From positions 248,001 through 312,000 of the IMG/VR virus record IMGVR_UViG_3300027759_006101: a DNA stretch of 64,000 bases; one strand, given 5' to 3'. The position numbers were made by a program, and so were the translations under genes. A model generated the notes under the pieces. That model was not told where the DNA came from and did no database searches. It saw nothing but the letters and a program-made list of their open reading frames with translations. Of this stretch, positions 33,304 to 51,284 are shown piece by piece (within the stretch, counting starts at the first letter, position 1; each line of letters starts with the position of its first letter).

Positions 33304-33579
33304 ATGAATATTTCCAAATTAGCTCAATTGATAAAAGATTTGGAAGAGTCTGGCTTAGAGAATGAAGCGACAGAATTGGCTGATGCTATTACTGAAGAAA
33401 CAGACCCAAATCAAATCTTAAACAGAGCTGATATCAATAATTTGATAGATAGTATTGCTGGAGGTGTTTTATATCACTTAAAGCTTGATAATAACATTTC
33501 TTTTGAAGGAAATAAAGTTTCAGATCAAACTTTATTGGACATTAGAAACAGCTTAGATCAAATTATTAAAACTTCTTAG
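33304..33579 (+). CDS. small acidic protein with SKLAQ/LEESGLENEATEL motif
   Basis: 91-aa ORF abutting the previous stop; motif related to those in 35379-36131 and 50703-51284. Confidence 0.7.
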   Translation: MNISKLAQLIKDLEESGLENEATELADAITEETDPNQILNRADINNLIDSIAGGVLYHLKLDNNISFEGNKVSDQTLLDIRNSLDQIIKTS

Positions 33580-33803
33580 CTATATTTTAGTTTTTTATAA
33601 TCTTCCATACAGCTTTCTGGAATTTCTTTTTCTCTGCATTCTTCGCAGTGAGTAGACATATGAGCCACCCAATCATCCCAAGTCTTAAGTTGTTTTCTAT
33701 TCATCGCAAAAACTGTACGATATTTAAGACCTGGAAGATATAATTCTTCTTTAGAATAAAAATTTTTTCCGCAATTTTGACAATAGCAAGTAATTGTAGG
33801 CAT
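33576..33803 (-). CDS. small zinc-ribbon protein; start corrected to MPTITC
   Basis: CQNC ... CEEC; ATG at 33803 overlaps the upstream TAA. Confidence 0.65.
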   Translation of the reverse strand: MPTITCYCQNCGKNFYSKEELYLPGLKYRTVFAMNRKQLKTWDDWVAHMSTHCEECREKEIPESCMEDYKKLKYS

Positions 33804-34258
33804 TATTTTACGAAGTCCACTAATCCTTTGCCTGTAACTAATTGCAAGATAGTTAAAAAGGCTATAATTCCACCAATAGTCCACGCAACTTTATTCAATG
33901 TATTTTTGACATCCCAGTACATTTTTTTGATAAACTTTACGTCTTCTTTCATTTCTTCAACAGTTCCGCCAAAATCAGAAATTTGTGCTGTATATTCTAA
34001 TGTTGCTTCTTCTAACTCAGCATCTCTCCTAATTTGAGCGCTTTGAAAATTCTCAAACAACTTTTCAAGAATTGCGTAGTCTTTAGAAAGTTTTTTAAAC
34101 TCATCATCTGAAAGTATTTTTAATGATTCAACCTTTCCTAGCAATTCTTTTTGATTAGTTAAAATATTAATAAGAGCCATATTAAAATCTAAATATGCCT
34201 CTGTCTGTGCTTTGTAGACGTTCTTAAGCTGTTCTAAACCGACTTCGTTTTCTTGCAT
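33803..34258 (-). CDS. coiled-coil protein with single C-terminal transmembrane helix
   Basis: GGAGGAG SD; heptad-like body; VAWTIGGIIAFLTILQLV. Confidence 0.75.
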   Translation of the reverse strand: MQENEVGLEQLKNVYKAQTEAYLDFNMALINILTNQKELLGKVESLKILSDDEFKKLSKDYAILEKLFENFQSAQIRRDAELEEATLEYTAQISDFGGTVEEMKEDVKFIKKMYWDVKNTLNKVAWTIGGIIAFLTILQLVTGKGLVDFVK

Positions 34259-34269
34259 TTCTCCTCCGA

Positions 34270-34590
34270 TTATAAGGCAGAGAGAACTTGTCGTAATTTT
34301 TTGGAAGATTCTGTGAGTTTAGTAATTGTTTCATCAACTACTTCAAAAATGATTAATTTACTTTTGGTTCCGCTATTGAGATCTTGTTTTTTAATTTGAT
34401 ATTTCAGGCCTTGATACGAAAGGATGGAAGCATTGACATACTTCTTTACATCCAATCCATTTTCAAATAATTCTCTAGCGTGTATATTCATTATGATGTT
34501 TTTATTTTCATCAACAATACAAGCTGGAAATTCAAATGTATTTAATAAGCCACATAGTAGATTAGACGGGTTCTCACAAGTTACTTCCAT
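34270..34590 (-). CDS. small PAS-like protein
   Basis: LLNTFEFPACIVDENKNIIMNIHARELF resembles a PAS N-terminus; GAGGT SD. Confidence 0.55.
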   Translation of the reverse strand: MEVTCENPSNLLCGLLNTFEFPACIVDENKNIIMNIHARELFENGLDVKKYVNASILSYQGLKYQIKKQDLNSGTKSKLIIFEVVDETITKLTESSKKLRQVLSAL

Positions 34591-34601
34591 TCAACACTAC
34601 C

Positions 34602-35360
34602 TCAAGTAAATATTCTATTGTAATATTCCTCGTATGTATTGTAACTGTCCTCGTCTTCCATAACTACAAAAATATTTTTAATTTTGCAATTTTTCTCTGA
34701 GTTCAAGAATGTTTTTATAGCTGATAATTGAACTCGGGCAGAATCATTGATATCTAAAGTTCCACAATCACTAGGCAACATTACAATATTTCTAGCTTCT
34801 TCTTGGTTTGCTAAAATAAGAGCTTTTTTGATTGCTGACTTTGTATCAGCTTCATTTACAAGCCTGCTCTCTCCTGCTACTACTGCATGATAAACTTTCT
34901 GAGGTTTAACTTTAGAATCACCAAAACCATTTGAAGTAATATATACGGTGCCCATTTTGATTGGTTTTGAGAATTTATCACATTCAAATTGAATTCTGCC
35001 TCTTGACATACGATTGAGCAGAGGATCGTCTATAGTAAGGCCAATATTCGTTGGGTAAACCAAAACATCTGACTTGACAAGATAAGGGTTTTCAACTTTG
35101 TGGATACTTACTTTAGTACTTTCGACAAATTCTTCAGTGATTTGTTTTACAGCTGGTTCGTCAATAACTTCTTGAGATTTAGATTCTTTTGTTTCTTCTT
35201 TGTACGAACACTTAAGAATAGAACCTTCGCAATCAGAAATCCATTTTTCTTGAATTACTGAAAATTCTTTTTTCAATAAAAAAGCTACTAATCTTGGGTT
35301 TGAAATTAACTTGAGAGCACATTCTGATGTTTGAGTGTAAAGTGGGCAAATTTGATCCAT
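34602..35360 (-). CDS. macrodomain-containing protein, degenerate active site
   Basis: SDVLVYPTN, GTVYITS, VYHAV, NIVMLP follow macro-fold order; Gly-rich loops missing. Confidence 0.75.
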   Translation of the reverse strand: MDQICPLYTQTSECALKLISNPRLVAFLLKKEFSVIQEKWISDCEGSILKCSYKEETKESKSQEVIDEPAVKQITEEFVESTKVSIHKVENPYLVKSDVLVYPTNIGLTIDDPLLNRMSRGRIQFECDKFSKPIKMGTVYITSNGFGDSKVKPQKVYHAVVAGESRLVNEADTKSAIKKALILANQEEARNIVMLPSDCGTLDINDSARVQLSAIKTFLNSEKNCKIKNIFVVMEDEDSYNTYEEYYNRIFT

Positions 35361-35378
35361 ACTTTAGTTATACAGATG

Positions 35379-36131
35379 CTATTTTAAAGGCTGAACTCCA
35401 TATTGCTGGAAGATAGAATTACCTTCGCCTTTCATAAAATCATCACGTAATTTTGGGTTATTTGTACTTCGTGCTTCTCTTGAAATATCTTTGAATATAT
35501 TTTGCAATATATTTGGCACATATTGTCCCAATCCAGGATATTTAGATGCCTTCTGTGTAAAATCATTAATAATTCTACGCCATTGGGAACTAGGCTGAGC
35601 TCTCAATTGGTCTGAATATAATTTTGTTAATGTAGGTATTGATGCTTGCAATATTTGTTGTTTTGCAGCTTCATTTCCACCAGATTTTGCAAGGTTTGAC
35701 ATATAGAATTCAATTGCTTTAAATGGTTCGCCAGTACTTGCCATAAATTGTTGAGCTTTTTCAAGATTCCTTATTTTCAAATCGTACAATTGTTGAGGAG
35801 TCATCCTAGCTTCTTGTTCAGGAGAAGGAGTATCTAAGATTAACGGACCTTCATTGCCACCAGGCCTATCTTCTTTGTAGGCTGAATCAGGTCCCATCAT
35901 ACCTTCTCCAAAATACTCTCCCATAGCAGTACCACGGGTATCAAACATATTACCTACATATTTATTAGTTTGATAACCTACGCCTTGAGGTGCATCTTTG
36001 TCTTCTTGAAAAAATGAAAAAGGGCTGTCCATCAACTGAGAAACTTTGATGAATTTTTCAAGTTTATCTGCAGTTTTATATAATTTAGAATTATCTAAAC
36101 TTTCTAATATTTCAAATAAATAATTTTTCAT
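35379..36131 (-). CDS. hypothetical protein, candidate internal head protein
   Basis: N-terminal LDNSKLYKTADKLEKFIKVSQ motif. Confidence 0.6.
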   Translation of the reverse strand: MKNYLFEILESLDNSKLYKTADKLEKFIKVSQLMDSPFSFFQEDKDAPQGVGYQTNKYVGNMFDTRGTAMGEYFGEGMMGPDSAYKEDRPGGNEGPLILDTPSPEQEARMTPQQLYDLKIRNLEKAQQFMASTGEPFKAIEFYMSNLAKSGGNEAAKQQILQASIPTLTKLYSDQLRAQPSSQWRRIINDFTQKASKYPGLGQYVPNILQNIFKDISREARSTNNPKLRDDFMKGEGNSIFQQYGVQPLK

Positions 36132-36133
36132 TT

Positions 36134-37288
36134 CTATGCCACATCAGGGAGATTGTAATTTTGTTTTAAGAAATTGTATAGAGCTGTTGCAGAACTTGAA
36201 TACTTATTGACAATTGTAACAACTGCTCTTTGCTTCTCTGCAACAGACATTTTTGGATCGTCAGCAATTGGCTTGATTTGATTTAATATGTCTGTTACTG
36301 ACCACTTAGGCATCAAGTTTTGCAACTGTTCTATAGATTTTTTGCTTTCTTCAGTAGGCTCCGGCTTAGCTGCTGAAACTGGTTCGCTAGTTGCTTGAGA
36401 AATTTTGACAAATTTGGTATTTTTATTTTTTGAAGAAGTATTTTGTCTTAAGGCATTTTGGATATCTGGATCTTTATATCTTGATGTTCCAACTGAATCT
36501 GGAATGAATTTTTTAAAATCTGACTTAAGTTCTGCAGAAGGCATATCGTAAGCGCCTTGAGAAGCTTGTTGTCCTCCATAACCTCTAGCGCCTTTTGTTT
36601 CTAATATATGTTCATAAGCGCTTGGTGCGTACATTTCAGACTCCATAGAATCCTGAATTCTTCTGTAAGCATTATAATCTAAAATAACTTCACGCAAAAA
36701 GGATGGTTCTGTTACTTGATCGACAATTTCGTTCCAGTTATTTTTAAACCAACCAACAATAGAATCAAAAATCCCCTTAATAACTGGCCACAAAGTCATA
36801 GCCATCCAGCCGTGCCTACTGAAAAACTTTTTCGATGATTGACTGATAGAATTAAAAATATTTTTCTTAGCTCTTGCTGATGCACCAGGAGAGGGAGTTA
36901 CAGGTGATGTTCCACTTGGCGCAGCAGGTGTCCCAGGACGTCTTGCAGGAACTGTGGGGCCTAAACCTGGTGTTCTTCGAGGTCTCACTCTAATAGGTCT
37001 TATTCTAGGCGCAGCTAAAACTTCTTTGTCAGAATTTGGCTCACTACCAGCTAACAATTCACTGCGAGAAAAACCTGCTTGCACAAGTTCATCCAAATCA
37101 AAAGTTGTACTTTCGGACTGAGCTAAAGAATCAATTTCTTCGAGCCCTTGAGTGATAATATCTAAAAAAGATTGTTCATTAACAAAAGGGCTTGTGACCG
37201 TTTCATTTTCAACAAAATCAATCAACAATTCTGATAACTTTGACTTAAAATAATCTTTATTTGAATTATTTAATGTAACTTGCGCCAT
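36134..37288 (-). CDS. hypothetical protein, candidate internal head/ejection protein
   Basis: acidic N-terminus, Arg/Pro-rich segment, amphipathic hydrophobic helix, KFVKISQ motif; AAGGA SD. Confidence 0.6.
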   Translation of the reverse strand: MAQVTLNNSNKDYFKSKLSELLIDFVENETVTSPFVNEQSFLDIITQGLEEIDSLAQSESTTFDLDELVQAGFSRSELLAGSEPNSDKEVLAAPRIRPIRVRPRRTPGLGPTVPARRPGTPAAPSGTSPVTPSPGASARAKKNIFNSISQSSKKFFSRHGWMAMTLWPVIKGIFDSIVGWFKNNWNEIVDQVTEPSFLREVILDYNAYRRIQDSMESEMYAPSAYEHILETKGARGYGGQQASQGAYDMPSAELKSDFKKFIPDSVGTSRYKDPDIQNALRQNTSSKNKNTKFVKISQATSEPVSAAKPEPTEESKKSIEQLQNLMPKWSVTDILNQIKPIADDPKMSVAEKQRAVVTIVNKYSSSATALYNFLKQNYNLPDVA

Positions 37289-37297
37289 TTATATTCC

Positions 37298-38248
37298 TTA
37301 AAACTTCTTCTTCGGAGACAATTCTCTATCATCTCTAAGCCAGTAATCTAGCAAGCCCCTATATTTTATATGATCAATAGCATTTTTCATTTCATCTGAC
37401 TTCAAAGGCAAAACAGGTTGAGCTAATGATAAACCTTTCAATGCGTTTAGTCCGATGTTTCCTAGGCCACGTAATCTGCTTTTTATTCTATTCAAATACA
37501 AGCCCTCTAATCCTTCGAGAGCTTTGATAAATTTTCTTTGTGATAAATTATTTGTAAGAAGTTCTTTTTCTAAGCCTGCTAGATTATTTTGAAATTCGTC
37601 TCTTTGGCTTTTCATATCCTCTGTTCTATCTAAACTTTTTTTCTCAATTTTTAAATAATATAAAAGTTTATTTTGAGCATCATTGTAATTTTTTCTGTGT
37701 TGATAGATTTTTTCTTTCTCTTTTTCTGAGCAATTAGAAGGCAATGAGTCAATACTCTTCCTTAATTGTGACGGTTCTAATATCTCATCTAAAGAGGCTT
37801 TTTTATTTATTTCACTAGTGTAACAATTATAACTATCTTCATCTTCTTGCACAGGAATATCAAAACTTTCATCTGGCAATTCATCAACGGGACTAGTAGT
37901 TGTGGTTGTCAGAGTAGTTACAGGTGTAGATGTTTCAGTTTTTTCCGAATACATAGATACATCGCCAATGTCAGTATACTTTGGCTCATCTTCTATTCTT
38001 GGTGTTTCTTCAGATACAATGATTGGCTCAGGATAATTTTTCAAGCTGAATATACGCTTTACATCATCAACATTATATTTTTCAGCTTCAGGTACATCTT
38101 CTTGTTTGACCTTTGCTACAGATGCACCCGGCGCATTCCAATTGACAGTAAAAAAGTAAGTTTTTCTAGCTGCATAGACATATTTAGCATTTTTATTATG
38201 CTCTTCTAAATATGATTGAGCTAACTTAATTATTTTTTCTTGGTCCAT
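37298..38248 (-). CDS. hypothetical protein, candidate head-associated protein
   Basis: KIIKLAQ, KYVYAA, INKKAS motifs; preceded by late-type promoter. Confidence 0.6.
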   Translation of the reverse strand: MDQEKIIKLAQSYLEEHNKNAKYVYAARKTYFFTVNWNAPGASVAKVKQEDVPEAEKYNVDDVKRIFSLKNYPEPIIVSEETPRIEDEPKYTDIGDVSMYSEKTETSTPVTTLTTTTTSPVDELPDESFDIPVQEDEDSYNCYTSEINKKASLDEILEPSQLRKSIDSLPSNCSEKEKEKIYQHRKNYNDAQNKLLYYLKIEKKSLDRTEDMKSQRDEFQNNLAGLEKELLTNNLSQRKFIKALEGLEGLYLNRIKSRLRGLGNIGLNALKGLSLAQPVLPLKSDEMKNAIDHIKYRGLLDYWLRDDRELSPKKKF

Positions 38249-38257
38249 AAAAATATA

Positions 38258-38283
38258 TTTCAGAAATCTAGGTCTTTCATCCT
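38258..38283 (-). promoter_or_regulatory. putative late promoter AGGA-N18-GAAA, 9 nt before ATG
   Basis: aagga-tgaaagacctagatttct-gaaatata on the minus strand; no SD. Confidence 0.55.
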
Positions 38284-39632
38284 TCTAAAATATATTTGCT
38301 GGGTTCAAGGACTGTTTCTTTAGTTACTTTGATTTTTATTTTTTCTTGATTATTTACGCCCAAATATTCGAATGCTGCTGAAGATAAAGACATCTTCACA
38401 ATAGAATTAAGTGCTCTTGTTCCAGTACCTGCTTTGATAGCTTTATTAATTACTTCTTCTAAAAAATCTTCTTCAAAATCTAAGATAACATTAGATTCAG
38501 CAAATAATAATTGATGCTTCTTCACAGGGCTATCTTCTAATTGCGTAAGACAATAAAGCATTTGTTCTCTGTCTAATGGAATCAAAGGAACAATTGATTG
38601 AATTCTGCCTACAAATTCAGTTGACATACCAAATTCAATTAAACTTTCGGCCAAAACCTCGTGAGATGCCTTATTGTAGATTTCATAATTTTTAACTTGA
38701 GCATCGTACTCATTGGTTTTTGTATTTCTGAAGCCTATTGTTCCTTCAGTAAGACCTAGTTTTTTAGCAACGATTTTTTCCAAACCATTAAATGCTCCGC
38801 CAAAACAAAATAAAATATTAGAAGTATCCACTACTACAGGTGGCGTACCTTGCTCTCCTAAGGCAGCAGAGCTAACTTTAACTTTTTTCCCTTCAATAAG
38901 TTTGAGTAATGTACTTTGAGTTGAATAGTGAAAACTCTCAAGTCTTGTTGCAGCACTCATATTTGATGCTAATTTGTCAATCTCATCAATAAATACAACA
39001 CCTTTTTCAGCTAATCCAGGTTCACCATTTGCTTTTAATAATAAATCAGTTATGACAGAATCAGCATCAGATCCTTGAAATCCTGTGGGTGAAAATGATG
39101 TAGCATCGCCCGAAACGAAAGGAACGTCTAAATACTTTGAAATTGTATTTACGATCAATGTTTTACCAGAGCCTGAAGGGCCTAAAAACAAGATATTTTG
39201 CTTATCATTACTGACTGAATTATGGATGTTTCGCATATGTTCAAAAACAGCTAAACTAATTCTTTTTTTTGCTATATCTTGACCAACGACTTTTTTGTTG
39301 AGGTTTTCATATAAATCTTTAGGATTGACATATTTGAATTTCTTAATGTCACTCGTGAATAAAAACTTTTTTGATAATGGTGCTATTTCTGCAAGCTTCA
39401 TTTTCAGATCAAGTACTGGACTCTCATTGTCACAACTTGAAATAAGAGAAATAACATTTTGATGAACTTGAAGTTGTCCAAATTTATTTCCTGTCAAATA
39501 CGATTTGTAACAAGCATCACACAAATGCATTTTTACTAACCTGTTTGCGAAAATTTCAATTTCTCCAAGAACGTCTTTAGTTGCAGGCCTACTACAAAAG
39601 TTACATTCAATTCCTTTAAGTTGTTTCAACAT
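38277..39632 (-). CDS. clpX: ClpX-like AAA+ unfoldase
   Basis: N-terminal CNFC..CDAC zinc finger, VVGQDIAK, Walker A GPSGSGKT, Walker B FIDEIDK, IGF loop, EFVGR; AGGAGG SD. Confidence 0.9.
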   Translation of the reverse strand: MLKQLKGIECNFCSRPATKDVLGEIEIFANRLVKMHLCDACYKSYLTGNKFGQLQVHQNVISLISSCDNESPVLDLKMKLAEIAPLSKKFLFTSDIKKFKYVNPKDLYENLNKKVVGQDIAKKRISLAVFEHMRNIHNSVSNDKQNILFLGPSGSGKTLIVNTISKYLDVPFVSGDATSFSPTGFQGSDADSVITDLLLKANGEPGLAEKGVVFIDEIDKLASNMSAATRLESFHYSTQSTLLKLIEGKKVKVSSAALGEQGTPPVVVDTSNILFCFGGAFNGLEKIVAKKLGLTEGTIGFRNTKTNEYDAQVKNYEIYNKASHEVLAESLIEFGMSTEFVGRIQSIVPLIPLDREQMLYCLTQLEDSPVKKHQLLFAESNVILDFEEDFLEEVINKAIKAGTGTRALNSIVKMSLSSAAFEYLGVNNQEKIKIKVTKETVLEPSKYILEG

Positions 39633-39648
39633 ATGTTCTCCTCCTAAT

Positions 39649-39656
39649 ATTATACA
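39649..39656 (-). promoter_or_regulatory. sigma70-like -10 box TGTATAAT for clpX
   Basis: same octamer before dnaK; close variants before the macrodomain gene and at 62731. Confidence 0.55.
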
Positions 39657-39715
39657 TTATAGGCAGGATTTGTTTTAGATTTATAATAAATATTTAATGT
39701 AATGGAGGGAAACAT

Positions 39716-39949
39716 ATGGCAGTAGTTGACAATAATTCACAGAATAGAGGCTTTGGGAAATGGAAAGTTCAAACTTACAATCCAACAGCTCTTATTGGAC
39801 CTATTGACGGTGTATTGATTGTAAGCAAAGATTTTTACACAATTTTCAAAGATGAGAAGTTGATCAATTGTCTTTTCAATGTACCAAGTCAAAATGTTGC
39901 TTTTGCATATAACGAAATTCACGTACAAGATTTAATGATTCAAAAATGA
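39716..39949 (+). CDS. hypothetical protein
   Basis: GGAGGG SD; preceded by AGGA-N18-TAAAT. Confidence 0.7.
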   Translation: MAVVDNNSQNRGFGKWKVQTYNPTALIGPIDGVLIVSKDFYTIFKDEKLINCLFNVPSQNVAFAYNEIHVQDLMIQK

Positions 39950-40230
39950 ACAGCAAAGAACTAAAACAAGAAGATAAGGTGGACAAGCAAAGACCAACTT
40001 ATGAAATGAAGATTATAATTTTAGATGGAGAAAATGCAATTAGAAATTTGCTTAGACTTCAAAAAAACTATAATCCTGAAACTGTTTTAGTCGATAGAAT
40101 GTTAAAAAGACTTGTTAATTATTTAGAAGAAAGTTATGGTTCAATTGCTAATGTAAGATTGTTCAGTAAAGGAATGTCTTTACAACCAATTGTTACTGAA
40201 GCTGTGCAACACTTGTTCGGAAAAAAATAG
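39946..40230 (+). CDS. hypothetical protein
   Basis: ATGA overlap with the previous gene. Confidence 0.7.
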   Translation: MNSKELKQEDKVDKQRPTYEMKIIILDGENAIRNLLRLQKNYNPETVLVDRMLKRLVNYLEESYGSIANVRLFSKGMSLQPIVTEAVQHLFGKK

Positions 40231-40236
40231 TGAAAA

Positions 40237-40833: not shown

Positions 40834-41417
40834 AACAAGCTTTTTTAACTTTTATCAGAAAAAAGGAAAATGATATAAAATTTCTGGCAGTTAAAAATCC
40901 TACTAACATTAACGACATAAACTATAATGAACTAAGATCTGGCTTACCCGTAATTGTTGTAATATCTGATGAAATCTTAGAAGCTCTTTACATAATTGGC
41001 ACAGATGGAGTGTTGTTTCAAGTTTTTGGTGACAATGATAGTCTTTTTTTTATGAAAAAAATAAATGACATATCCTTGATAAATATCCAAAAATACAATC
41101 TAATTAAATTCATTTTACTAGACGCTTTTGACGAGCTTACAATTCAAGAATCAAAAATTTATAAAAATATTTTTGAAAGTTTTGAAGAAAAAATTTATTA
41201 CAATACTTTGCATACAGAATTAGAATTTTTGGGAATAAAAAATTTTGCAATCAAAGAACTAATGAAGATAGAACTGGACGCAAAACTTAAGGCTAGATTA
41301 TTAGATAAAATTAAAAATGTAAAGCCAATGCCAGATCGTTTTTTGAAAAAGAAAATTGATGTTGATTTAACTGGGTATGGCATTTATATCAATGCCTTTA
41401 TTGGTCAATCTTTGTAA
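40830..41417 (+). CDS. hypothetical protein; start corrected to MKQAF
   Basis: ATGA overlap at 40830-40833. Confidence 0.65.
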   Translation: MKQAFLTFIRKKENDIKFLAVKNPTNINDINYNELRSGLPVIVVISDEILEALYIIGTDGVLFQVFGDNDSLFFMKKINDISLINIQKYNLIKFILLDAFDELTIQESKIYKNIFESFEEKIYYNTLHTELEFLGIKNFAIKELMKIELDAKLKARLLDKIKNVKPMPDRFLKKKIDVDLTGYGIYINAFIGQSL

Positions 41418-41849
41418 TTCTGCTCTGTTGAACTCAATTGCACTTGCTTCACATTTTTCACAGCAATTTTCAGACCTTTTCCAAACTCTTCTTCCATCTC
41501 TAACACCAGGGGCAGAAAGCACAGGAAGTGTAATGACTTCACAATGGCAATTATCATGCAACGGAGGAAGTTGCATCATTACTGTGGGATCATTCTCAAT
41601 TTTTTGAACATTCTTTTCTAAATCTTCTGGTGTAAACTCATCTGTAGGAGTTTCGTCTTCTACATCAACGTCAATTGGATTGATAATTTCATCAACAGAT
41701 TCAGGTTCTTCAGTAACTTCTTCTTGCTCTAATGGAGTTTCTTGAATATCTGTATCTTCCGAATCTTCTTCTGCAAAAAATTTAAACTTTTTATCTCCAG
41801 AGATTGGCAATCCAAATATATTGTATTTCTTAGCTTGTCGATACCACAT
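41367..41849 (-). CDS. protein with Mu gpF/SPP1 gp7-like minor head protein motif
   Basis: PPLHDNCHC resembles PPxHxNCRC; MWYRQAK N-terminus, acidic linker, second Cys cluster. Confidence 0.6.
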   Translation of the reverse strand: MWYRQAKKYNIFGLPISGDKKFKFFAEEDSEDTDIQETPLEQEEVTEEPESVDEIINPIDVDVEDETPTDEFTPEDLEKNVQKIENDPTVMMQLPPLHDNCHCEVITLPVLSAPGVRDGRRVWKRSENCCEKCEASAIEFNRAELQRLTNKGIDINAIPS

Positions 41850-41857
41850 AGGTTTTT

Positions 41858-41884: not shown

Positions 41885-42877
41885 ATGTCAAATGAGTTTG
41901 ATCCCAAAAAAATTATTGATTTTGAAAAGGATTATTATAATATATTATCCATAGATAAAGAATCTTTTCCAAAAGGTAATACCAGAAATGATGTTATTGC
42001 AAGAACAAAAATACTAGAATCTGCTTTCAGAAAAGGAGCAAGAAAAGCTCATCCTGATTTTGGCGGATCTGATGAACAATTCTTAGACTTGGTGAGAGCC
42101 AGAAGAATACTTGAAGACTCTATTTTGCGTAAGATATATGATAATGGAGAGTTTTTGGATTTTGATATTAACATTTCTGAAGACACTAGCTTCAAAGTTG
42201 ATTGGACAAAAGTTGGCAATTATAGAAAAGGCACTCCTGAAGACACAGTAGGATTTAGCTTATTCTTAAGATTATGCGAGAAAAAAGAAGAGCTTGGACT
42301 TGTGCCTGCATTTTTTCCAACAACTAATGAACACAATTATCAATGGGATTTTGTAATTAAAGATTCCAATAAAAATAAATTAGTTATTTCTATTGTCAAT
42401 GACGAAAATGAAGTGTTAAGACTTACAACTTCTGACAAAATACAAGATTCTTTACCATTTAAGATTTATATTTGTGTTCCAGAAAGTTCGCTGGTATTTT
42501 CACGAGACAATAACTTAACTATTGACCCTTATGGCAAAACCCTTATAAATGGAACAATCTTAAACGCAAACTACAATGATTTAGATTTGTTGGAGTCTAC
42601 AAACATAAACTCTACAAATAATTATATAGAAAAAGCTTTAGCTCAAGATTTAATTGCTTTTAAAAATGGAGAACTCAAGTCAAAATCATATAAAAACCAG
42701 AAAAAATGGATTTCTAGTGAAGAACTAAAAAAAATTGATAAAGAAAAATTACAAGAAATTGTAAACTTCAGAAGTTTTGAGGTTGCCAATTTAGAAAATG
42801 CAGACACTTGGTTAGATTCAATTGACAAAAAACCTATTAAAAGATTGTTTGAAAGCAAACCTGATTTGCCTTTATAA
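41885..42877 (+). CDS. J-domain (class C DnaJ-like) protein
   Basis: DYYNILSI, AFRKGARKAHPDFGG (HPD motif), ARRILEDSILRKIYD; unrecognised C-terminal domain. Confidence 0.85.
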   Translation: MSNEFDPKKIIDFEKDYYNILSIDKESFPKGNTRNDVIARTKILESAFRKGARKAHPDFGGSDEQFLDLVRARRILEDSILRKIYDNGEFLDFDINISEDTSFKVDWTKVGNYRKGTPEDTVGFSLFLRLCEKKEELGLVPAFFPTTNEHNYQWDFVIKDSNKNKLVISIVNDENEVLRLTTSDKIQDSLPFKIYICVPESSLVFSRDNNLTIDPYGKTLINGTILNANYNDLDLLESTNINSTNNYIEKALAQDLIAFKNGELKSKSYKNQKKWISSEELKKIDKEKLQEIVNFRSFEVANLENADTWLDSIDKKPIKRLFESKPDLPL

Positions 42878-42951
42878 CAGGGCTCTATTATCAAAAATTG
42901 GAAAAAATAAGAGTGGTTATATTTTAGCACTAATGCGAGGAGACCAATAAT

Positions 42952-44319
42952 TTGGCAAAGCATATATACATCATCGACACTTGTGTCCTACTCCACGATC
43001 CCCTTGCTCTCTATAAATTCGGTGATAATGATATTTACATACCATTAGCAGTCATCGATGATTTGGATGATATCAAGACAAGAAAAGAAAATGTTGGTTG
43101 GTCAGCTAGACAAGTATTTAGAAACTTAGAACATTACTCACTTCAAGATCTTCTCAAGGGCGTTAAAATCAATGAGTTGGGAGGAAGATTGTTTGTTTAC
43201 AACACTGAGTCTCCTTTACAAAAAAATGAAAGACCAAATATCGTTAAAGTTCATTCTGATAACGCAATTATAGAATGCTGCTTAGCCCTAAAATCAGCAA
43301 ATCCTAGAAAGAAAGTAGCGATTATCACAAAAGATACTGGATTAAGAATTCGTGCTATCACTTGGGGTTGTGCAGCTGAAAATTACAGAGCAGATCAACT
43401 TTCTGATGAAATTTACACAGGTATCAGAAAATTTGAACTTACTAATGAAACAGATTGGGCGTTACTTTGGTCAGATTATGAAATTGAAGCTAAAAAACTC
43501 TCTGAAGAAACAATTACTCAGCTTGGCGACATATTTCCAAACGAATTTATTTTATTTCACTACGGAGATAAAATTTGCCCTACACTATATAAGAGAGGCA
43601 TTTTTAGAATTCTCAAAGAAAAATCCAATGCTAAAGAATCAAAGGGATTCTCTGGAATTCAAGGTAAAAACTTAGAGCAAAAGTGTGCTTTAGAAATTTT
43701 ATCTGATTTGACTGTAGCTTTAGTAACTCTATCTGGACCAGCTGGTACAGGTAAATCTTTCTTAGCTCTTGCAGCTGCTTTGCAAATGATTAACGAAGGT
43801 ATCTACGACAAGATTGTTGTAATGAAGCCACTGATTGCGGTTGGCGGAAAAGACATTGGTGCTCTTCCTGGTGATAAGTTTGACAAGATTTCTGCTTGGC
43901 TAGGACCTATCAAAGACAACATTGACCAAATCTTGGGCTCTAAATCTCTTTCTGCTAATAATATGTTTGAAGAAATGTGTCGAGATGGAATTATTGAAGT
44001 AGAAGCTATGGCTTTTATTCAAGGTCGTTCTATTCCAAGATCTATCATTATTCTTGATGAAGCTGAGAACATTAGCCCTAGAGAAGCAAGGATGGTAGTA
44101 GAAAGATGCGGAAAAGACAGTAAAGTAATCCTTCTTGGCGATCTGTCACAAGTCGAAAATCCTTATCTTGATGCTAGATCAAACGGCCTTTCTCACGCTA
44201 TATCAGGTGGAAAGAAAAGTGAACTAGTAGCTTCTGTTACCCTAAGTAAAGTTGAAAGATCTGAATTAGCTGCTGTTGCTAGTGAGATTTTCAATAGACC
44301 TGAAGCTAGAAGAAATTAA
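42952..44319 (+). CDS. phoH: PIN domain-PhoH family ATPase (YlaK/PhoH2 type)
   Basis: IIDTCVLLHDP and DNAI (PIN), GPAGTGKS, IGALPG, FIQGRS, ILDEAEN, GDLSQ; GAGGAG SD, TTG start. Confidence 0.9.
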   Translation: MAKHIYIIDTCVLLHDPLALYKFGDNDIYIPLAVIDDLDDIKTRKENVGWSARQVFRNLEHYSLQDLLKGVKINELGGRLFVYNTESPLQKNERPNIVKVHSDNAIIECCLALKSANPRKKVAIITKDTGLRIRAITWGCAAENYRADQLSDEIYTGIRKFELTNETDWALLWSDYEIEAKKLSEETITQLGDIFPNEFILFHYGDKICPTLYKRGIFRILKEKSNAKESKGFSGIQGKNLEQKCALEILSDLTVALVTLSGPAGTGKSFLALAAALQMINEGIYDKIVVMKPLIAVGGKDIGALPGDKFDKISAWLGPIKDNIDQILGSKSLSANNMFEEMCRDGIIEVEAMAFIQGRSIPRSIIILDEAENISPREARMVVERCGKDSKVILLGDLSQVENPYLDARSNGLSHAISGGKKSELVASVTLSKVERSELAAVASEIFNRPEARRN

Positions 44320-44332
44320 AAACGGATAACTA

Positions 44333-47300: not shown

Positions 47301-50161
47301 TTTATAATTCAAGCATTAGAAAATCGACTAGCGGCATTTATCAAATAATTTATATTGACACTAATTTTAATTACTACTTAAGAAAAGTCAAAAATAATTC
47401 AGTAAATGGGCATCTTGATTATTCAAAAAGATTAGTTGCTCAATCTTCAATTGGTGGAACAATTTTTTATCTTGCACGTCCAGAAACTTCTACGACAGTG
47501 TTCACTTGGACTAATTCAAATTATCCAGTTTCTTTATCTGACGTTTATTTAGTTTCAACTGGTAACACAGTTATTCCAAAAACTTACTCAACTGATTACA
47601 CAATAAACCCAAGTAATGGTCAAATCAGTGTTGTAGGTTCTGGCTGGACTGGGACATTGTATGTACATCTTTATGCAGATAATACAGTCCCTTCTTATGA
47701 CGCAGAACCGAAACAAATACTAAATAGATATTATTACATCCCACGAGTAACCAAAGACAGATTTATTTTTACTTCCGGAGTTGCTTTAGGTTCATCTACT
47801 TGGCAAATTGATTCTGAGCATTTTCAAGTAGTAAACAGCATTGGAACTGCTACTACTACTGAAATTAAATTTAATAGAGATAGAAGTTCTTGGCTTGCAG
47901 ATTATGACACAAGCAAGAATTATAGCTCAGTAGCTCAACACATTTTAAGTAGCGACTCAGTATCAAATTATTTCTTCACAGACAGATTGTCATCAGATGG
48001 GTATTATTTTAAAACTGGATTAGGGAATTCGAGTGTTTTCAACGACACAAATCTTATTGATCCAATTACTCTTAATAAAATTGGCTTATTCACTGGTGAT
48101 TTCTATTTAGAAAAGTTAATAAATTCAGGAATTGGAGCTACTCTTACAGACTGGTACGCTGGTTTGGGATTGACTGTTGATGCTAATGTACTAATTTTAA
48201 CTAATAAAACCACACCAGATTATAGCGACAAAATAATAGATTCTTCATATCAATCTTCTTATTATGATGATTTGAATAGATTAATTCTGCAAGATAAAAC
48301 TGGTAAACGATACCAGAAAGTTTACACATTCAAAAGAAATGAATATCAAACTGTCAACTTAGATTATCATTCAGCTTTCGGAGTTACATTATCACCGATT
48401 CAAGCAATTTTGACTAATTCTGCCGGAAGTGGAACATTTGTTTTATATTACGATCCCGCTAATACAAACAGAAACACAAGCAATCGTTCTTGGATTGATG
48501 TTGCTACAAGATCTAGCTTCTTGTGTGCAACAGGTAACACAGGTAGTGTTCCAGATTTCAATGATATAACTTATGTTCCTGTGATAGGGCCTTTGAGTTC
48601 ACCATCTGGGTCAGGTAACACAGCGCAGTTCGATGGTTACGTAGTTGGCACTGGCGATACTATTATGATTAGAAATCAATCAGATAGTACTAAAAATGGC
48701 ATCTATACTTCAGTTGTTAGAAACAAATACACTTTAGTGAGAGCTACTGATTTAAATGCAACTTCAGAATTATATGAGTTAGGTAGAGTTTCATTTGGTA
48801 ATAGAATTTTTGAATTAAATCTGCCAGATGATAATTCTTCATATAACTTAGGAGCGTCAGCGTTAAATACTCCGCTTATATGGAAAAATTTGGGTTCTGA
48901 GTATGTCATCGATGTTGTCGGTTTAGGACATACTAATTTTTCAAATCTAAACGCACTTCCTGATTATATCAATGGAAGAGAAATTAGTGAAGGAAATAAA
49001 GTTTTCTTTTTTGGACAAACTACAAATTCTGAAAAAATAGTTGCAAGATTTAGAAAAAAAGTAATGCCTAATCTAACAAGAGTAGGTAATGGATCAAGTA
49101 CAACTCAATTCCAAATTTCAAGTTTGTACGTAAATGATGCAAATAGAAATATAAACTATGAATTGTATTATGATCCCTCATTGACTTCAGTTGGAACACA
49201 TCCCGTACAATGGTTTAGACAAAATTTTATATCAAATTTTTCACCAGTTTCTTTTGGAAGCACTATCCCGTTAAGTGTCAATAATTTTATTATATTAAAT
49301 GCACAAAAAGGAGATAGAATTTTACTTTTCAATCAAACAAATGAAACTGAAAATGGCATCTATTATTACGACATTGTGAGAAACTTCTATCTGTCAAGAG
49401 ATGAATTTTTAGATTCTGATGATGAAATTTCTGTTGACAAAAAAGTATATGTTTCATCTGGTTTTGCAAACACAGGATATTACGGCTTAAGCTTTGATGA
49501 AGACGTAGTAAGTCCAGGAATTGGTATTACTCCAATATATTGGACAAAAATTAGAGAAAACACAACATTGACTGACGCTAGAGTTGCATCAATTGCAAAT
49601 ATAAATCTAACAAATCCTCCATCGAAAGTTGATGAAATTACTTTAAGAAAATTTGATAGAATTTTACTTAAAAATCAAACATCACAAACTGAAAATGGAG
49701 TCTATATAGTTTCAAGCATAGGTAATTCAAATGTTTGGACCAGAGCCACAGATTTAGATTCAAGTTCAGAACTAATACCTCAACTTTCTGTCAATGTTGG
49801 ATACGGCACTACTAATTCTAATAAAAACTTTAGAATTAAATTGCCAGTTCCAAGAACAATCACTAATACACAAACAACTGCTTACATATTAAACACCGAT
49901 AACATTAATTGGATTGACACATCTTCATCTGAGTTATATGAATCAAGCCCTGAATTATGGCAAAACTTAAAAGCAGGGTATGAAAATGCTGTTTTTCTTG
50001 GGACAGCAAAAATGGGTGTAGAGTCAACAGCTTCTAGTCGTAGTTTTGGAATTGCAGTAAGAACACCAAATTCTACTATTTTATCAGGTTTTGGAATCAC
50101 ACAAAATGGTAAAGTAAGAGGATTAAATTTCAAAGTAGAATATAAAATTACAAAGGACTAA
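44333..50161 (+). CDS. large virion structural protein (1942 aa) with ~11-12 DRVLVKxQ..NGIY domains
   Basis: repeats such as DRVLVKDQSAKSENGIY and DRILLKNQTSQTENGVY; same domain in 30759-31631. Confidence 0.75.
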   Translation: MAHAFLWTELNSSNNTEVSREISSAGFGTNTSTTWTKKLFKLKWINSDVENIRLWIDNEYANIYNTSHYPTIKNTSNLKIIEDLGFEFKFTVFDTFIVNQTNADLATSSNLGSTTIVSSNFLIAPSYIDGIALDTNKKILVKSQSDAKTNGLYKVSSTSGQGTYGGIVAEDILTAAKIVTLNNASYFLYSVGLSPFQSAAAGSTSFKWVNRSTLYQLANVDCATENNLQQSAVGLSTPSLVLDNHTLSTNDRVLVKDQSAKSENGIYFVSSLYQPNANTYYNPYNSSLAADDFWDSALDFIRSNNSLSVQFVNSAVGNSGGYFRYYSGSGLTGGTASTSDLKWANAAYNYKHFGVNWYYEISSGSAIGFSFDLSSNSGTLTSTPRQIVNSSGIATTLATNERVLVKHYLPSFSGIYTVSNVGSGSTGLWVRNTAFDSSSEITQTVVSVANNTNSLGGNIWYLGKTETYNSLFLLNIDPITIQERYYPYTYEPVNNLVNANQTDLTTVNEVYFSNSGIAISQRVLVSGQTSFPAQNGIYSVSSICDVVYGLKLNDNYSVLRGSVARIVNGNTGAGTTYMLYAPGTNTSPGAIGVTWVDITNITNIRCNAETTVNKFSSQYITPNDFDVAVAVGTTVLVRIDDETRNGIYTVSAIGNSQKQIFNYENALSSWTFDIFESVLSEGPAGSHNVSPNFKKQIKGIYQIASIASTETGQIFVPEISFPSFQNYENFFGSEGKGSSLLQDLDIDWYKQDFQKYSVKAVLNVADVSLIPTTSGTAISSLVRSHSGLGNTILQSNDSVLIFVGSGSSSSSALNGIYRPSFTGIGSVYFTQHEDFYFDTKFESTTDKKSLASPYERPSVVSVEQGYMGVGTTFQSKYVYMQGEVAIRANTFSSDYSTEDLEKYLHTGTETFKIGSEIRLNTNTQDLDKFPRLAPIQHTLLADLALDTVSNDILIVKRNGNQLYSLVSGDPSLFYFQINDRVFYYATDEDIYNSSIRKSTSGIYQIIYIDTNFNYYLRKVKNNSVNGHLDYSKRLVAQSSIGGTIFYLARPETSTTVFTWTNSNYPVSLSDVYLVSTGNTVIPKTYSTDYTINPSNGQISVVGSGWTGTLYVHLYADNTVPSYDAEPKQILNRYYYIPRVTKDRFIFTSGVALGSSTWQIDSEHFQVVNSIGTATTTEIKFNRDRSSWLADYDTSKNYSSVAQHILSSDSVSNYFFTDRLSSDGYYFKTGLGNSSVFNDTNLIDPITLNKIGLFTGDFYLEKLINSGIGATLTDWYAGLGLTVDANVLILTNKTTPDYSDKIIDSSYQSSYYDDLNRLILQDKTGKRYQKVYTFKRNEYQTVNLDYHSAFGVTLSPIQAILTNSAGSGTFVLYYDPANTNRNTSNRSWIDVATRSSFLCATGNTGSVPDFNDITYVPVIGPLSSPSGSGNTAQFDGYVVGTGDTIMIRNQSDSTKNGIYTSVVRNKYTLVRATDLNATSELYELGRVSFGNRIFELNLPDDNSSYNLGASALNTPLIWKNLGSEYVIDVVGLGHTNFSNLNALPDYINGREISEGNKVFFFGQTTNSEKIVARFRKKVMPNLTRVGNGSSTTQFQISSLYVNDANRNINYELYYDPSLTSVGTHPVQWFRQNFISNFSPVSFGSTIPLSVNNFIILNAQKGDRILLFNQTNETENGIYYYDIVRNFYLSRDEFLDSDDEISVDKKVYVSSGFANTGYYGLSFDEDVVSPGIGITPIYWTKIRENTTLTDARVASIANINLTNPPSKVDEITLRKFDRILLKNQTSQTENGVYIVSSIGNSNVWTRATDLDSSSELIPQLSVNVGYGTTNSNKNFRIKLPVPRTITNTQTTAYILNTDNINWIDTSSSELYESSPELWQNLKAGYENAVFLGTAKMGVESTASSRSFGIAVRTPNSTILSGFGITQNGKVRGLNFKVEYKITKD

Positions 50162-50221
50162 AGGTATTGTTACTCCCCATAAAAAAATATAGTAATAACA
50201 ATTTATCAAGAGAGATAAAAT

Positions 50222-50701
50222 ATGCATAATTTAGAATCAGGCCTTCACATTATTTTAGATGATATAGCTCCCAATATTCACTCCTTAGAAGAGCAAGCTA
50301 AAATTATCGCTTTAGCTTCGTCAATCATAAATAAAAAATTCAATTCTGTAAGATTATCTAAAACAGATTCTAAAACTGTAGAAGCTAAAATGACCGAAGC
50401 CATTCTGATTTCTATGAGTTCACTCAGCAATTGGGATGATGAAGATGATGAAAATGATTACATTGACGGACGTGGATTGTCTGCTAATCAATTAGTCAGA
50501 AAAGTAGCTAATACTAAACCTTCCTGGGGCAAGATGGACATTATTGATCCTGATGTTTTAGATGATGTATTTTCTTTTGAAGAAGAAGACGTAAAAGATG
50601 AAGAAAATTTCTTTGAAAATGGACAACAGACTACAGAAGTCTTTGACACCAAAGGCAGAGGAAGACATCGTTCAGATTTTAATTTTATGCCAGTAAAATA
50701 A
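50222..50701 (+). CDS. acidic hypothetical protein
   Basis: 159-aa ORF after a late-like motif at 50162; KIIALAS, VRLSK, RKVAN motifs. Confidence 0.7.
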   Translation: MHNLESGLHIILDDIAPNIHSLEEQAKIIALASSIINKKFNSVRLSKTDSKTVEAKMTEAILISMSSLSNWDDEDDENDYIDGRGLSANQLVRKVANTKPSWGKMDIIDPDVLDDVFSFEEEDVKDEENFFENGQQTTEVFDTKGRGRHRSDFNFMPVK

Positions 50702-50702
50702 T

Positions 50703-51284
50703 ATGAAAAAAACAATTTTATCTCAAATGATGCCACCAATGGGAGATCCAATGGCTGCTATGGGTATGCCACCACCAGTAGCTCCTGCAGCTGGTCCGGG
50801 TATGGCTGGGGGTAATGCTGAAAAAATTATCAGAATTCCACTTTCAAATTTAGGTTTAATTTTAGCAGATGTTGAAGTTGAAAAAAAATTGATGGAAGAT
50901 TTTGAAGACAACGAACTTGAACTTGCCAATGAAATTTGGATTATGTATGGTGGCACAGAAGATGGTGGAGTTGTTCAGTCAAGAGTTGGCAAAAGAATGG
51001 AAAATCAAGATGTTAGTGATGAAGAAATTGAAAATACTAACAAATCTCGTTGGGAAAGACTTCCTGATGGAGAAAATTTGGATGATTTAGAAATTGAACT
51101 TTCTGATTTTGCTAATGCTATAAAATATCTTTCATTCGGCTTTTCTAAGAATAAAGCAAAAGAACAGCCAGCTCCTGGCGGAGGAATGCCAGGTATGGCA
51201 TCAAGAAAGCTTGAAAATATGGTAAAATTAGCACGAAATTTGGATAAATTTGGCCTTTATCGTATAGCTGATCGATTAATGTAA
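50703..51284 (+). CDS. hypothetical protein, candidate head-associated protein
   Basis: MKKTILSQ start, Met/Pro/Gly linkers, C-terminal VKLARNLDKFGLYRIADRL. Confidence 0.7.
   Translation: MKKTILSQMMPPMGDPMAAMGMPPPVAPAAGPGMAGGNAEKIIRIPLSNLGLILADVEVEKKLMEDFEDNELELANEIWIMYGGTEDGGVVQSRVGKRMENQDVSDEEIENTNKSRWERLPDGENLDDLEIELSDFANAIKYLSFGFSKNKAKEQPAPGGGMPGMASRKLENMVKLARNLDKFGLYRIADRLM

What the first reader, a model, noticed from the sequence alone, without database searches (positions are those of the whole stretch)
33304..51284. Shared peptide tags on unrelated proteins: candidate capsid-targeting and protease-processing code
Seen: three otherwise dissimilar proteins carry the same ~20-25-aa helix, N-terminal in two (SKLAQLIKDLEESGLENEATEL at 33304; LESLDNSKLYKTADKLEKFIKVSQ at 36131) and C-terminal in one (VKLARNLDKFGLYRIADRL at ~51220). 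A shorter basic/hydrophobic-x-[AS] motif recurs at segment boundaries: KIIKLAQ, KYVYAA, NKKAS (37298-38248), KEVLAA, KFVKISQ (36134-37288), MWYRQAK, KFFAE (41367-41849), KKTILSQ (50703), KIIALAS, RKVAN (50222). Most of these genes lie downstream of the late-type promoter. Established: T4 internal proteins use an N-terminal capsid-targeting sequence removed by gp21, and the phiKZ prohead protease trims many head proteins at a short motif. Inference: a portable, position-independent tag loads cargo into the head, with cleavage after Ala/Ser.
Basis: partly seen in the sequence, partly recalled or inferred. Interest (0 to 1): 0.8.

Follow-up and report, generated by a model that had tools for sequence, protein, structure and literature searches.

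The report
Portable address tags on jumbo-phage proteins
Several unrelated small proteins of an uncultured 358-kb freshwater phage share two conserved, transferable end-tags (a 32-residue helical hairpin and a 6-8-residue peptide), which most likely send varied cargo to one common site, possibly the inside of the phage head.

Summary
The core observation is real. The window is part of a 358-kb uncultured jumbo phage. Three unrelated proteins (91, 250 and 193 aa) share a helix-Gly-helix hairpin, hAxxL[DE]xxGxxxxA[DT]xh. Profiles built only from orthologues in other phages pick out the other two window copies as the best non-self matches among about 19,800 positions.

The hairpin belongs to a large undescribed family: 162 cluster representatives at E<=1e-3 among 1.84 billion proteins. 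It has no Pfam, PHROG or PDB match. Copies sit at N-termini, C-termini and internally, often several per protein.

A stricter form is real: [FWY/h]-h-[KR]-h-[AS]-[QA]. It is about 25-fold enriched in the first 12 residues of clade proteins and absent from outgroup phages. It marks module boundaries in fused proteins. It is invariant (KTSQ) at the N-terminus of a phage HtrA-like protease.

Tags are gained and lost between orthologues and are followed by disordered linkers. They sit on fast-evolving cargo, including a GH108 lysozyme in relatives.

What the tags do is unproven. A T4-like capsid-targeting and processing signal is my best reading (about 0.4). Rivals are a retained docking module for a chaperone/protease hub and ClpX degrons. 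No head genes were reachable, so no cleavage test was possible.

The parts
33304..33579 (+). Family E gene (91 aa). N-terminal acidic hairpin tag at 33307-33402.
   Evidence: The tag is conserved in 5 orthologues. The E-orthologue profile ranks the D and A tags 2nd and 3rd in the window.
35379..36131 (-). Family A gene (250 aa). Residues 1-32 (nt 36036-36131) are the hairpin ending in KFIKVSQ. A disordered linker and a helical C-domain follow.
   Evidence: The tag is the best-conserved part: A9, D13, D22, K29 and Q32 are >=90% conserved in 20 sequences of about 18% identity. AF2 gives helices 2-14 and 18-34 at pLDDT 82-92, and residues 35-94 below 50.
36134..37288 (-). Family B gene (384 aa), a fusion of modules. 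KEVLAA at 37010-27 precedes a Pro/Arg-rich segment. KFVKISQ at 36395-36415 precedes the last ~86-aa module.
   Evidence: Orthologues start MSKF[IVR]K[IV][SA][QA]. In L016/L019 the last module is a separate 89-aa gene starting MSKFIKVSQ.
37298..38248 (-). Family C gene (316 aa). N-terminal mini-hairpin at residues 1-27 (nt 38168-38248), containing KIIKLAQ and KYVYAA.
   Evidence: Only the N-terminal ~30 aa are conserved among orthologues. The second motif corresponds to RLVRLAA, CKIAA and TKISQ in orthologues.
38277..39632 (-). ClpX homologue, first gene of the operon holding C, B and A. Candidate partner in the rival readings.
   Evidence: E 2e-56 to solved ClpX, IGF loop kept, pore loop GFQG. 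Gene order is conserved in L010-L020.
41367..41849 (-). 160-aa Zn-binding protein. N-terminal MWYRQAK at 41829-41849. Conserved boundary KFKFFAE at 41769-41789, followed by an acidic linker.
   Evidence: MWY[KR]xA starts every orthologue and at least 3 other families in the clade.
41885..42877 (+). Non-canonical J-domain protein. Transcribed divergently, 35 bp from the variable tagged-cargo locus.
   Evidence: J-protein genes also lie beside hairpin-tagged genes in another lineage.
50703..51284 (+). Family D gene (193 aa). Short tag MKKTILSQ at 50703-50726, Met/Pro-rich segment, conserved core, C-terminal hairpin at 51207-51281.
   Evidence: Most of the 120 listed homologues start MKY[VI]K[LI][AS]Q. 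The C-terminal hairpin is near invariant.
50222..50701 (+). Not shown to be tagged.
   Evidence: single close orthologue. No hairpin or strict short-motif hit.

Best explanation
The window encodes proteins carrying two kinds of portable address tag.

Tag 1 is a ~32-residue helix-Gly-helix hairpin with clade consensus hAxxLDxxGxYxxADxh[ED]xxhKx[SA]Q. It sits on a flexible linker at either end of a protein, or between modules.

Tag 2 is a 6-8-residue amphipathic peptide, aromatic/hydrophobic-hydrophobic-[KR]-hydrophobic-[AS]-[QA]. It is usually the very N-terminus (MSKFVKVAA, MKYVKLAQ, MWYKLAA types). It is also the last turn of the hairpin.

Shown:
- The tags are conserved while the cargo diverges.
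- They are gained and lost between orthologues.
- They mark the junctions of fused modules.
- They are clade-specific and position-specific.

Inferred, as my preferred mechanism: the tags bind a common receptor in the assembling prohead core, as the T4 capsid-targeting sequence does. In this way they load a variable arsenal (small acidic or basic proteins, a Zn-binding protein, and in relatives a GH108 lysozyme) into the head for ejection. The h-K-x-[SA]-[QA] end would be a processing site that frees the cargo. The candidate enzymes are a prohead protease not yet located, or the phage HtrA-like serine protease, which itself begins with an invariant ...L[VI]KTSQ.
For: Tags real and portable.

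Tag more conserved than cargo.

Hairpin on a disordered tether.

N-terminal enrichment: 22 of 258 clade proteins against 0.87 expected; outgroup 2 of 1,466 against 3.5.

Fusion versus separate genes, with the motif at every junction.

Variable locus beside the J-protein gene holds 1-3 genes that share only the tag. This resembles T-even internal-protein loci with CTS-like starts (PMC9026906).

A cell-wall hydrolase carries the tag in relatives. Capsid-internal ejected wall hydrolases are known (T7 gp16; from my own knowledge).

Propeptides at either end are precedented (T4 Alt). Short 20-24-aa propeptides are known in SPN3US.

Protease with invariant KTSQ at residues 15-18 in 8 orthologues of 54-88% identity. 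HtrA enzymes prefer small aliphatic P1 residues (my own knowledge).

The tagged genes are flanked by virion-structure genes.
Against: - There is no virion or cleavage evidence of any kind.
- No capsid, portal, scaffold or gp21-like gene lies in the ~112 kb of this genome that I read, so the motif could not be checked at a capsid propeptide.
- There is no sequence similarity to the T4 CTS.
- The residue after [AS] is not conserved in MWY-type tags, so many tags may not be cleavage sites.
- In the wide family the hairpin is often internal and multi-copy, and tandem pairs look like a folded domain.
- A J-domain protein carries the hairpin in another lineage, which is unexpected for capsid cargo.
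- Family D is highly conserved and abundant. That is unlike variable cargo and more like a core component.
Confidence: 0.4

Rival explanations
1. Retained docking module. The hairpins and half-hairpin peptides are not removed. They bind each other or one hub protein. This gathers a set of phage proteins into a cytoplasmic assembly or proteostasis complex (clients, J-protein/Hsp70, HtrA-like protease, ClpX) that is unrelated to the capsid interior.
For: - The hairpin looks like a single TPR-like unit (GxYxEA). True TPR proteins appear as weak hits.
- 66 of 151 proteins have 2 or more copies. N-terminal, C-terminal and internal positions all occur.
- In L101, six tagged proteins lie within ~12 kb, including a J-domain protein with an N-terminal hairpin, and an (untagged) trypsin-like protease gene sits among them.
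- J-protein genes lie beside tagged genes in two lineages.
- This genome's HtrA-like protease is tagged.
- The short tag equals the consensus of hairpin helix 1 (hhKhA).
Against: - It does not explain why Q32 and K29 at the hairpin end are >=90% conserved in family A.
- It does not explain why the motif sits exactly at module junctions.
- No receptor has been identified.
Confidence: 0.3
2. ClpX recognition signals. The N-terminal hh[KR]h peptides are degrons or N-domain-binding tags for the phage's own ClpX homologue working with ClpP. They would give timed removal or remodelling of the tagged phage proteins.
For: - A ClpX homologue with the IGF loop is the first gene of the operon encoding families C, B and A.
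- E. coli N-motif-1 degrons (TAKL, TAKI, TIKV, TLKV; PMC9775585 Table 2) resemble FVKV, YIKI and WYKL.
- The tags are at the extreme N-terminus and are followed by disordered segments.
- The tags and this ClpX N-domain are both clade-specific.
Against: - Fully conserved internal copies exist in family B and at the end of the hairpin in family A.
- C-terminal and multi-copy hairpins occur.
- The hairpin occurs in lineages where no ClpX was seen within 10 kb.
- The degron resemblance is only a 4-residue pattern.
Confidence: 0.15
3. Chance resemblance of ordinary amphipathic helices and low-complexity N-termini in an AT-rich genome.
For: - The literal short motif is ubiquitous.
- The patterns were defined after seeing the data.
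- The 91-aa member is not linked to the others by HMMER.
Against: - Profiles built without any window sequence recover the window tags.
- E-values reach 2.7e-17 against 1.84 billion proteins.
- There is clade-specific N-terminal enrichment and none in the outgroup.
- The tag-coding DNA is only ~50% identical between copies, so the likeness is kept at protein level.
Confidence: 0.03

Closest known systems
T4 capsid-targeting sequence (CTS) of internal proteins IPI-III, removed by prohead protease gp21
   Same: - A short N-terminal peptide is shared by otherwise unrelated, fast-evolving small proteins.
- The loci are variable, and their genes share only the N-terminus.
- The tag ends in a hydrophobic-small-X triplet, comparable to I-A-E.
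- The protease may itself carry the motif.
   Different: - No sequence similarity to MKTYQEFIAE.
- The last residue is Q/A rather than E.
- A second, much larger tag (the 32-aa hairpin) works at the C-terminus and internally, and in several copies.
- No evidence of packaging or cleavage.
- No gp21-like gene was seen in the part of the genome read.
phiKZ/SPN3US head-protein propeptides cut at (S/A/G)-x-E
   Same: - A jumbo phage with many processed, ejected head proteins.
- Short 20-24-aa N-terminal propeptides exist there too.
- Multiple cuts occur within one precursor.
   Different: - Those propeptides share only the 3-residue cut site, not a conserved folded tag.
- This is a different phage lineage.
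- The motif is different.
ClpX N-motif-1 degrons (lambda O, Dps, sigma-S)
   Same: - N-terminal position.
- A polar/hydrophobic-hydrophobic-basic-hydrophobic pattern.
- A ClpX homologue is encoded next to the tagged genes.
   Different: - Internal and C-terminal copies exist.
- The hairpin has no counterpart among degrons.
- Nothing here was tested biochemically.
Single TPR/Sel1-like helical hairpin; scaffolding-protein C-terminal helix-turn-helix (P22 gp8)
   Same: - A ~30-residue antiparallel helix pair with a G-x-Y-x-E-A turn signature.
- A terminal helix-turn-helix used for docking.
   Different: - No Pfam TPR or other family match.
- Solitary or paired copies rather than arrays.
- No detectable similarity to any solved chain.

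Membership tests
T4-type capsid-targeting sequence / prohead propeptide | Short N-terminal peptide shared by otherwise unrelated proteins of one phage | tested here: met
   At least 6 families. 22 of 258 proteins against 0.87 expected.
T4-type capsid-targeting sequence / prohead propeptide | Sequence similarity to the T4 CTS or to its [LI]-x-E cut site | tested here: not met
   The tags end in [AS]-[QA]. The T4 CTS is as described in PMC9026906.
T4-type capsid-targeting sequence / prohead propeptide | Tag removed by the prohead protease; cargo present in proheads/virions; tag sufficient to package a foreign protein | not testable with these tools
   Uncultured phage. No cultured relative in 50,697 phage records.
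T4-type capsid-targeting sequence / prohead propeptide | Genome encodes an assemblin-fold (gp21-like) prohead protease, and head proteins carry the same motif | tested here: inconclusive
   No head genes in contig positions ~238-352 kb. A gp21-like protease is a core gene of the possibly related moraphages (PMC12619734).
ClpX N-motif-1 degron | Pattern polar-T/hydrophobic-hydrophobic-basic-hydrophobic at a free N-terminus | tested here: inconclusive
   N-terminal tags fit loosely. Internal and C-terminal copies do not.
ClpX N-motif-1 degron | ClpXP-dependent degradation | not testable with these tools
   Only the presence of a ClpX homologue with an IGF loop is shown.
TPR / Sel1-like repeat | Match to a curated TPR-clan model; arrays of 3 or more units | tested here: not met
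   No Pfam hit for the window proteins. Only 2 of the 150 best hits match any single TPR model, and these look like true TPR proteins caught weakly. Copy number is 1-3.
SPP1 gp7 / Mu F minor head protein (for the 160-aa MWY protein) | Profile similarity over the MuF domain | tested here: not met
   Only 13-14 columns around H-x-N-C-[HR]-C align, with P 0.04-0.08. No Pfam hit.
HtrA/DegP serine protease (for the tagged protease just right of the window) | Trypsin_2 domain with His and GxSGG catalytic motifs; PDZ domain | tested here: met
   Pfam Trypsin_2 E 1.8e-17. HtrA chains E ~4e-20. H67 and S177 are invariant. The PDZ domain is absent (223 aa), so this is a protease-domain-only member.

The most novel reading that the evidence does not exclude
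The hairpin and the hh[KR]h[AS] peptide form an address code read by a phage-encoded proteostasis machine: a ClpX-like unfoldase, J-protein/Hsp70 and a tagged HtrA-like protease. This machine unfolds, holds, trims and loads a fast-evolving arsenal of effector proteins into jumbo-phage heads. That would be chaperone-assisted, tag-directed protein packaging. The same code would be shared by many uncultured large-phage lineages and could be used to predict their injected effectors.
Probability: 0.12. Interest if true: 0.9.

Novelty: new variant of a known kind. Interest (0 to 1): 0.68.

Why it matters
If the tags are sorting signals, a simple profile search would list the cargo of many uncultured large phages. 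That cargo would probably include injected host-takeover and anti-defence proteins, which cannot otherwise be recognised because they have no homologues.

The hairpin is a widespread domain family with no entry in Pfam, PHROGs or the PDB.

A position-independent tag that may also be self-cleaving would be a practical handle for loading foreign proteins into phage heads, as the T4 CTS is.

The tags co-occur with a phage ClpX, two J-proteins, DnaK and a tagged HtrA-like protease. This raises a testable link between phage-encoded chaperones and protein sorting. Why large phages carry such chaperones is an open question.

Tried and rejected
- Megablast and tblastn against cultured phages found no relative of the tagged proteins or of a two-hairpin protein.
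- Pfam and PHROGs on all tagged proteins found nothing.
- The PDB profile search with the tag found nothing meaningful.
- ESM Atlas returned only unnamed viral clusters at lead-level scores.
- The AF2 model of family D is poor (pLDDT 56).
- The AF2 model of family A has no fold match.
- The MuF/SPP1 gp7 idea for the 160-aa protein is rejected as unsupported.
- The tag alignment was too variable for a DNA-pattern scan of viral contigs.
- T4 late promoter or any shared upstream motif: not found.
- I walked along the genome looking for capsid, portal and protease genes, about 10 kb to the left and 38 kb to the right. I found only fibre-like giant proteins, proteases and chaperones.
- Recent DNA duplication as the source of the shared helix is rejected, because the coding DNA is only ~50% identical.
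- Read mapping and run searches were not used. They would not bear on the question.
Full report
**What the window is.** The 64-kb window is positions ~248,001-312,000 of IMGVR_UViG_3300027759_006101. This is a 358,269-bp uncultured phage contig from freshwater metagenomes. It has no close relative among 50,697 deposited phage records.

The window holds the following:
- Fibre-like structural genes at 1-31 kb.
- A minus-strand operon led by a ClpX homologue at 38277-39632.
- A J-domain protein, a PIN-PhoH fusion, GyrB and GyrA.
- DnaK.

It may belong to, or be near, the 'moraphages' of Bacteroidota. Their reported core genes include a ClpA/X-like ATPase, PhoH and a T4-like prohead protease (PMC12619734). 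I did not test that membership.

**The shared helix is real.** The second one is the N-terminus of gene 35379-36131(-), which I call family A. The other two are family E (33304-33579, 91 aa) and family D (50703-51284, 193 aa, C-terminal copy).

Using the ClpX gene I fetched eleven related loci with 47-77% ClpX identity and the same gene order. In every orthologue the tag is kept:
- Family A begins hAxxLDxxGxYxxADxh[ED]xxhKx[SA]Q, followed by a Pro/Gly/Ser/Thr-rich stretch.
- Family E begins KLAQhhxxLxExG[LF]ExEA[DT].
- Family D ends KLENMVKLAxNxDxxGxYxxADRh.

The tests used profiles that contain no window sequence:
- The family-A HMM finds the D C-terminus as the best of 251 window ORFs (E 0.0026). 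This is ahead of the window's own A copy.
- The family-E profile ranks D second and A third of 19,810 positions.
- Profile-profile scores are 5.7-8.5 SD above column shuffles, in the expected register.
- By HMMER alone, E is not linked to A or D. E is the weakest member.
- The coding DNA of the three copies is only ~50% identical. The likeness is therefore kept at protein level and is not a recent copy.

**The hairpin is a large, undescribed family.** A 32-column profile of the tags (alignment A2) was searched against 1.84 billion representatives. It gave 162 proteins at E<=1e-3, with a best E of 2.7e-17.

The wide consensus is M-[LI]-x-x-L-[IV]-K-L-A-[ND]-x-L-D-x-K-G-[LF]-Y-K-E-A-D-x-[IL]-D-x-[IL]-I-K-x-A. 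I rescanned the 152 proteins then held (the 150 best hits plus two cluster members) and found 228 copies in 151 of them:
- 121 are N-terminal, 23 C-terminal and 84 internal.
- 66 proteins have two or more copies.

None of the proteins looked up carries a functional name; the only name found is 'hypothetical protein'. No Pfam or PHROG family covers the module. No solved structure matches it. A two-hairpin protein has no tblastn match in cultured phages.

Attached domains are sporadic: ferritin/Dps-like (3), AP2, a DnaJ-type zinc finger, an HMG-like segment, and in close relatives of this phage a GH108 lysozyme. A few true TPR proteins appear as weak hits. The G-x-Y-x-E-A turn resembles one TPR unit, but no TPR model matches the window proteins.

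AlphaFold2 on family A gives helix 2-14, a turn, and helix 18-34 at pLDDT 82-92. A disordered stretch follows at 35-94, then a helical C-domain with no fold match.

**The short motif.** A stricter form is real.
- K[FYI][IV]K[IVL][SA][QA] occurs three times in the window against 0.005 in shuffles. All three are in adjacent genes A, B and C.
- A slightly wider form gives 25 hits in 332 distinct clade proteins against 1.6 in shuffles. In outgroup phages it gives 4 against 2.6. The clade counts include orthologues, so they are not independent.
- Family B orthologues begin MSKF[IVR]K[IV][SA][QA]. Two of them carry a second internal SKFVKTSQ.
- In two more distant relatives the last module is a separate 89-aa gene beginning MSKFIKVSQ.
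- The window's 384-aa protein is a fusion. KEVLAA sits where relatives have the N-terminal MSKFRKIAA, and KFVKISQ sits before the last module.
- Most of the 120 listed family D homologues begin MKY[VI]K[LI][AS]Q.

A related N-terminus, MWY[KR]x[AS], starts several things:
- The 160-aa Zn-binding protein (41367-41849) and all its orthologues.
- Orthologues of the 94-aa protein, but not the window's own copy.
- Three consecutive genes in one relative.
- One family C orthologue.

Overall, [FWY][IVLY][KR]x[AS] lies within the first 12 residues in 22 of 258 distinct clade proteins against 0.87 expected from the internal rate. In 1,466 outgroup proteins it is 2 against 3.5.

The same pattern (hhKhA) is the consensus of hairpin helix 1 and of the end of helix 2. 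The short tags therefore look like half-hairpins.

NKKAS is not. KIIALAS and RKVAN cannot be judged.

**Modularity.**
- Tags are more conserved than cargo. In family A, at ~18% overall identity, A9, D13, D22, K29 and Q32 are at least 90% conserved. In family C only the first ~30 residues align.
- Tags come and go. The 94-aa family has MWY in some relatives only.
- The locus beside the J-protein gene holds one gene in the window, two in some relatives (a hairpin-tagged GH108 lysozyme plus the MWY protein) and three MWY genes in another.
- In unrelated lineages, neighbouring genes also share the hairpin. Two adjacent genes do so in L088 and three or four in L089.
- Six proteins within ~12 kb carry the hairpin in L101. 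One is a J-domain protein with an N-terminal hairpin, and an untagged trypsin-like protease gene lies among them.

**A tagged protease.** Just right of the window the same genome encodes an S8 subtilisin, an S24/S26 peptidase, a 223-aa HtrA-like protease, a canonical DnaJ and UvsW. DnaK, at the window's own right end, follows.

The HtrA-like protease matches Pfam Trypsin_2 at E 1.8e-17 and solved HtrA chains at E ~4e-20. It has no PDZ domain. It begins MNFKIDCNLLESLVKTSQ. In eight orthologues of 54-88% identity, K15, T16, S17 and Q18 are invariant. The nine residues before the Q closely match the end of the family-A hairpin in relatives (VENLIKTSQ).

So a protease carries the motif in its own N-terminal extension. 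That fits self-processing, and it also fits co-targeting.

**How it most likely works.**

Shown: there are conserved, transferable, position-tolerant tags on flexible tethers, attached to diverse and fast-evolving proteins. A short form marks module junctions.

Inferred: the tags bind one common partner.

It is a T4-CTS-like system that loads cargo into the prohead core, with the h-K-x-[SA]-[QA] end as a processing site. The grounds are:
- The analogy with T-even internal-protein loci and CTS-like starts (PMC9026906).
- Propeptides at both ends of T4 Alt, and short propeptides in SPN3US.
- The lysozyme cargo.
- The fusion/separate-gene pattern.
- The tagged protease.

Against it:
- There is no virion or cleavage evidence.
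- No head genes lie in the ~112 kb I could read.
- The residue after [AS] varies in MWY tags.
- Hairpins are multi-copy and internal in the wide family.
- A J-protein is tagged in another lineage.
- Family D is strongly conserved.

The rivals are:
- A retained docking module that assembles a chaperone/protease hub with its clients (0.3).
- ClpX degrons or N-domain-binding tags (0.15). The pattern resembles E. coli N-motif-1 (PMC9775585). The ClpX homologue keeps the IGF loop that docks on ClpP.
- Chance (0.03), which holds only for the three unsupported instances.

**What failed.**
- The MuF/gp7 idea for the 160-aa protein rests on a 13-14-residue H-x-N-C-[HR]-C match and is not significant.
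- The model of family D is poor.
- No promoter motif could be confirmed.
- Walking ~10 kb left and ~38 kb right met only giant fibre-like proteins, proteases and chaperones.

**Verdict.** The tag family appears undescribed.

I rate it a new variant of a known kind (phage protein-sorting tags). Interest is 0.68.

Noticed in passing
window 38277-39632 (-): True ClpX homologue (E 2e-56 to solved ClpX). The IGF loop is kept. The pore-1 loop GYVG is replaced by GFQG. Its own CxxC...CxxC N-domain does not align to ClpX N-domains.
   Followed up: partly
L102:5211-5882, i.e. ~5 kb right of the window end (same genome): A PDZ-less HtrA-like serine protease whose N-terminal extension ends in an invariant KTSQ. 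It sits in a cluster with an S8 subtilisin, an S24/S26 peptidase and a canonical DnaJ.
   Followed up: partly
window 41885-42877 (+) and 60567-62261 (-): The genome encodes DnaK and two J-proteins. One is non-canonical (J domain only plus a unique C-domain), inside the window. The other is a canonical DnaJ outside it.
   Followed up: no
window 42952-44319 (+): PIN domain fused to PhoH.
   Followed up: no
window 8208-13775 (-): Tandem array of six ~220-260-aa paralogues with Laminin_G_3 / fibre-tip-like ends. This looks like a diversified receptor-binding set.
   Followed up: no
L117, L123, L125 (contig ~318-352 kb): The right end of the genome is a run of giant proteins of 974-3479 aa. One has many PKD repeats and one has a weak PA14 hit.
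   Followed up: no
L004:191-1147, L011:6795-7751, L014:6787-7680 (absent from the window): A hairpin-tagged GH108 lysozyme gene lies between the J-protein gene and the MWY gene in relatives but not in this phage. This is a presence/absence polymorphism of tagged cargo.
   Followed up: partly
window 39946-40230 (+): The 94-aa protein lacks the MWY N-terminus that its orthologues in five more distant relatives carry.
   Followed up: partly
window 41367-41849 (-): The C-terminal PP[LV]HxxCHC...CxxC Zn-type motif of the 160-aa protein resembles the HPNCRC motif of MuF/SPP1 gp7 minor head proteins. The match is only 13-14 residues and is not significant.
   Followed up: yes
window 34602-35360 (-): Conserved operon member with only a weak macro-domain hit (E 0.009). 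It is followed by a 106-aa protein, a 151-aa protein with a hydrophobic (possibly membrane-anchoring) C-terminal stretch, and a small Zn-ribbon protein, all syntenic across the clade.
   Followed up: no
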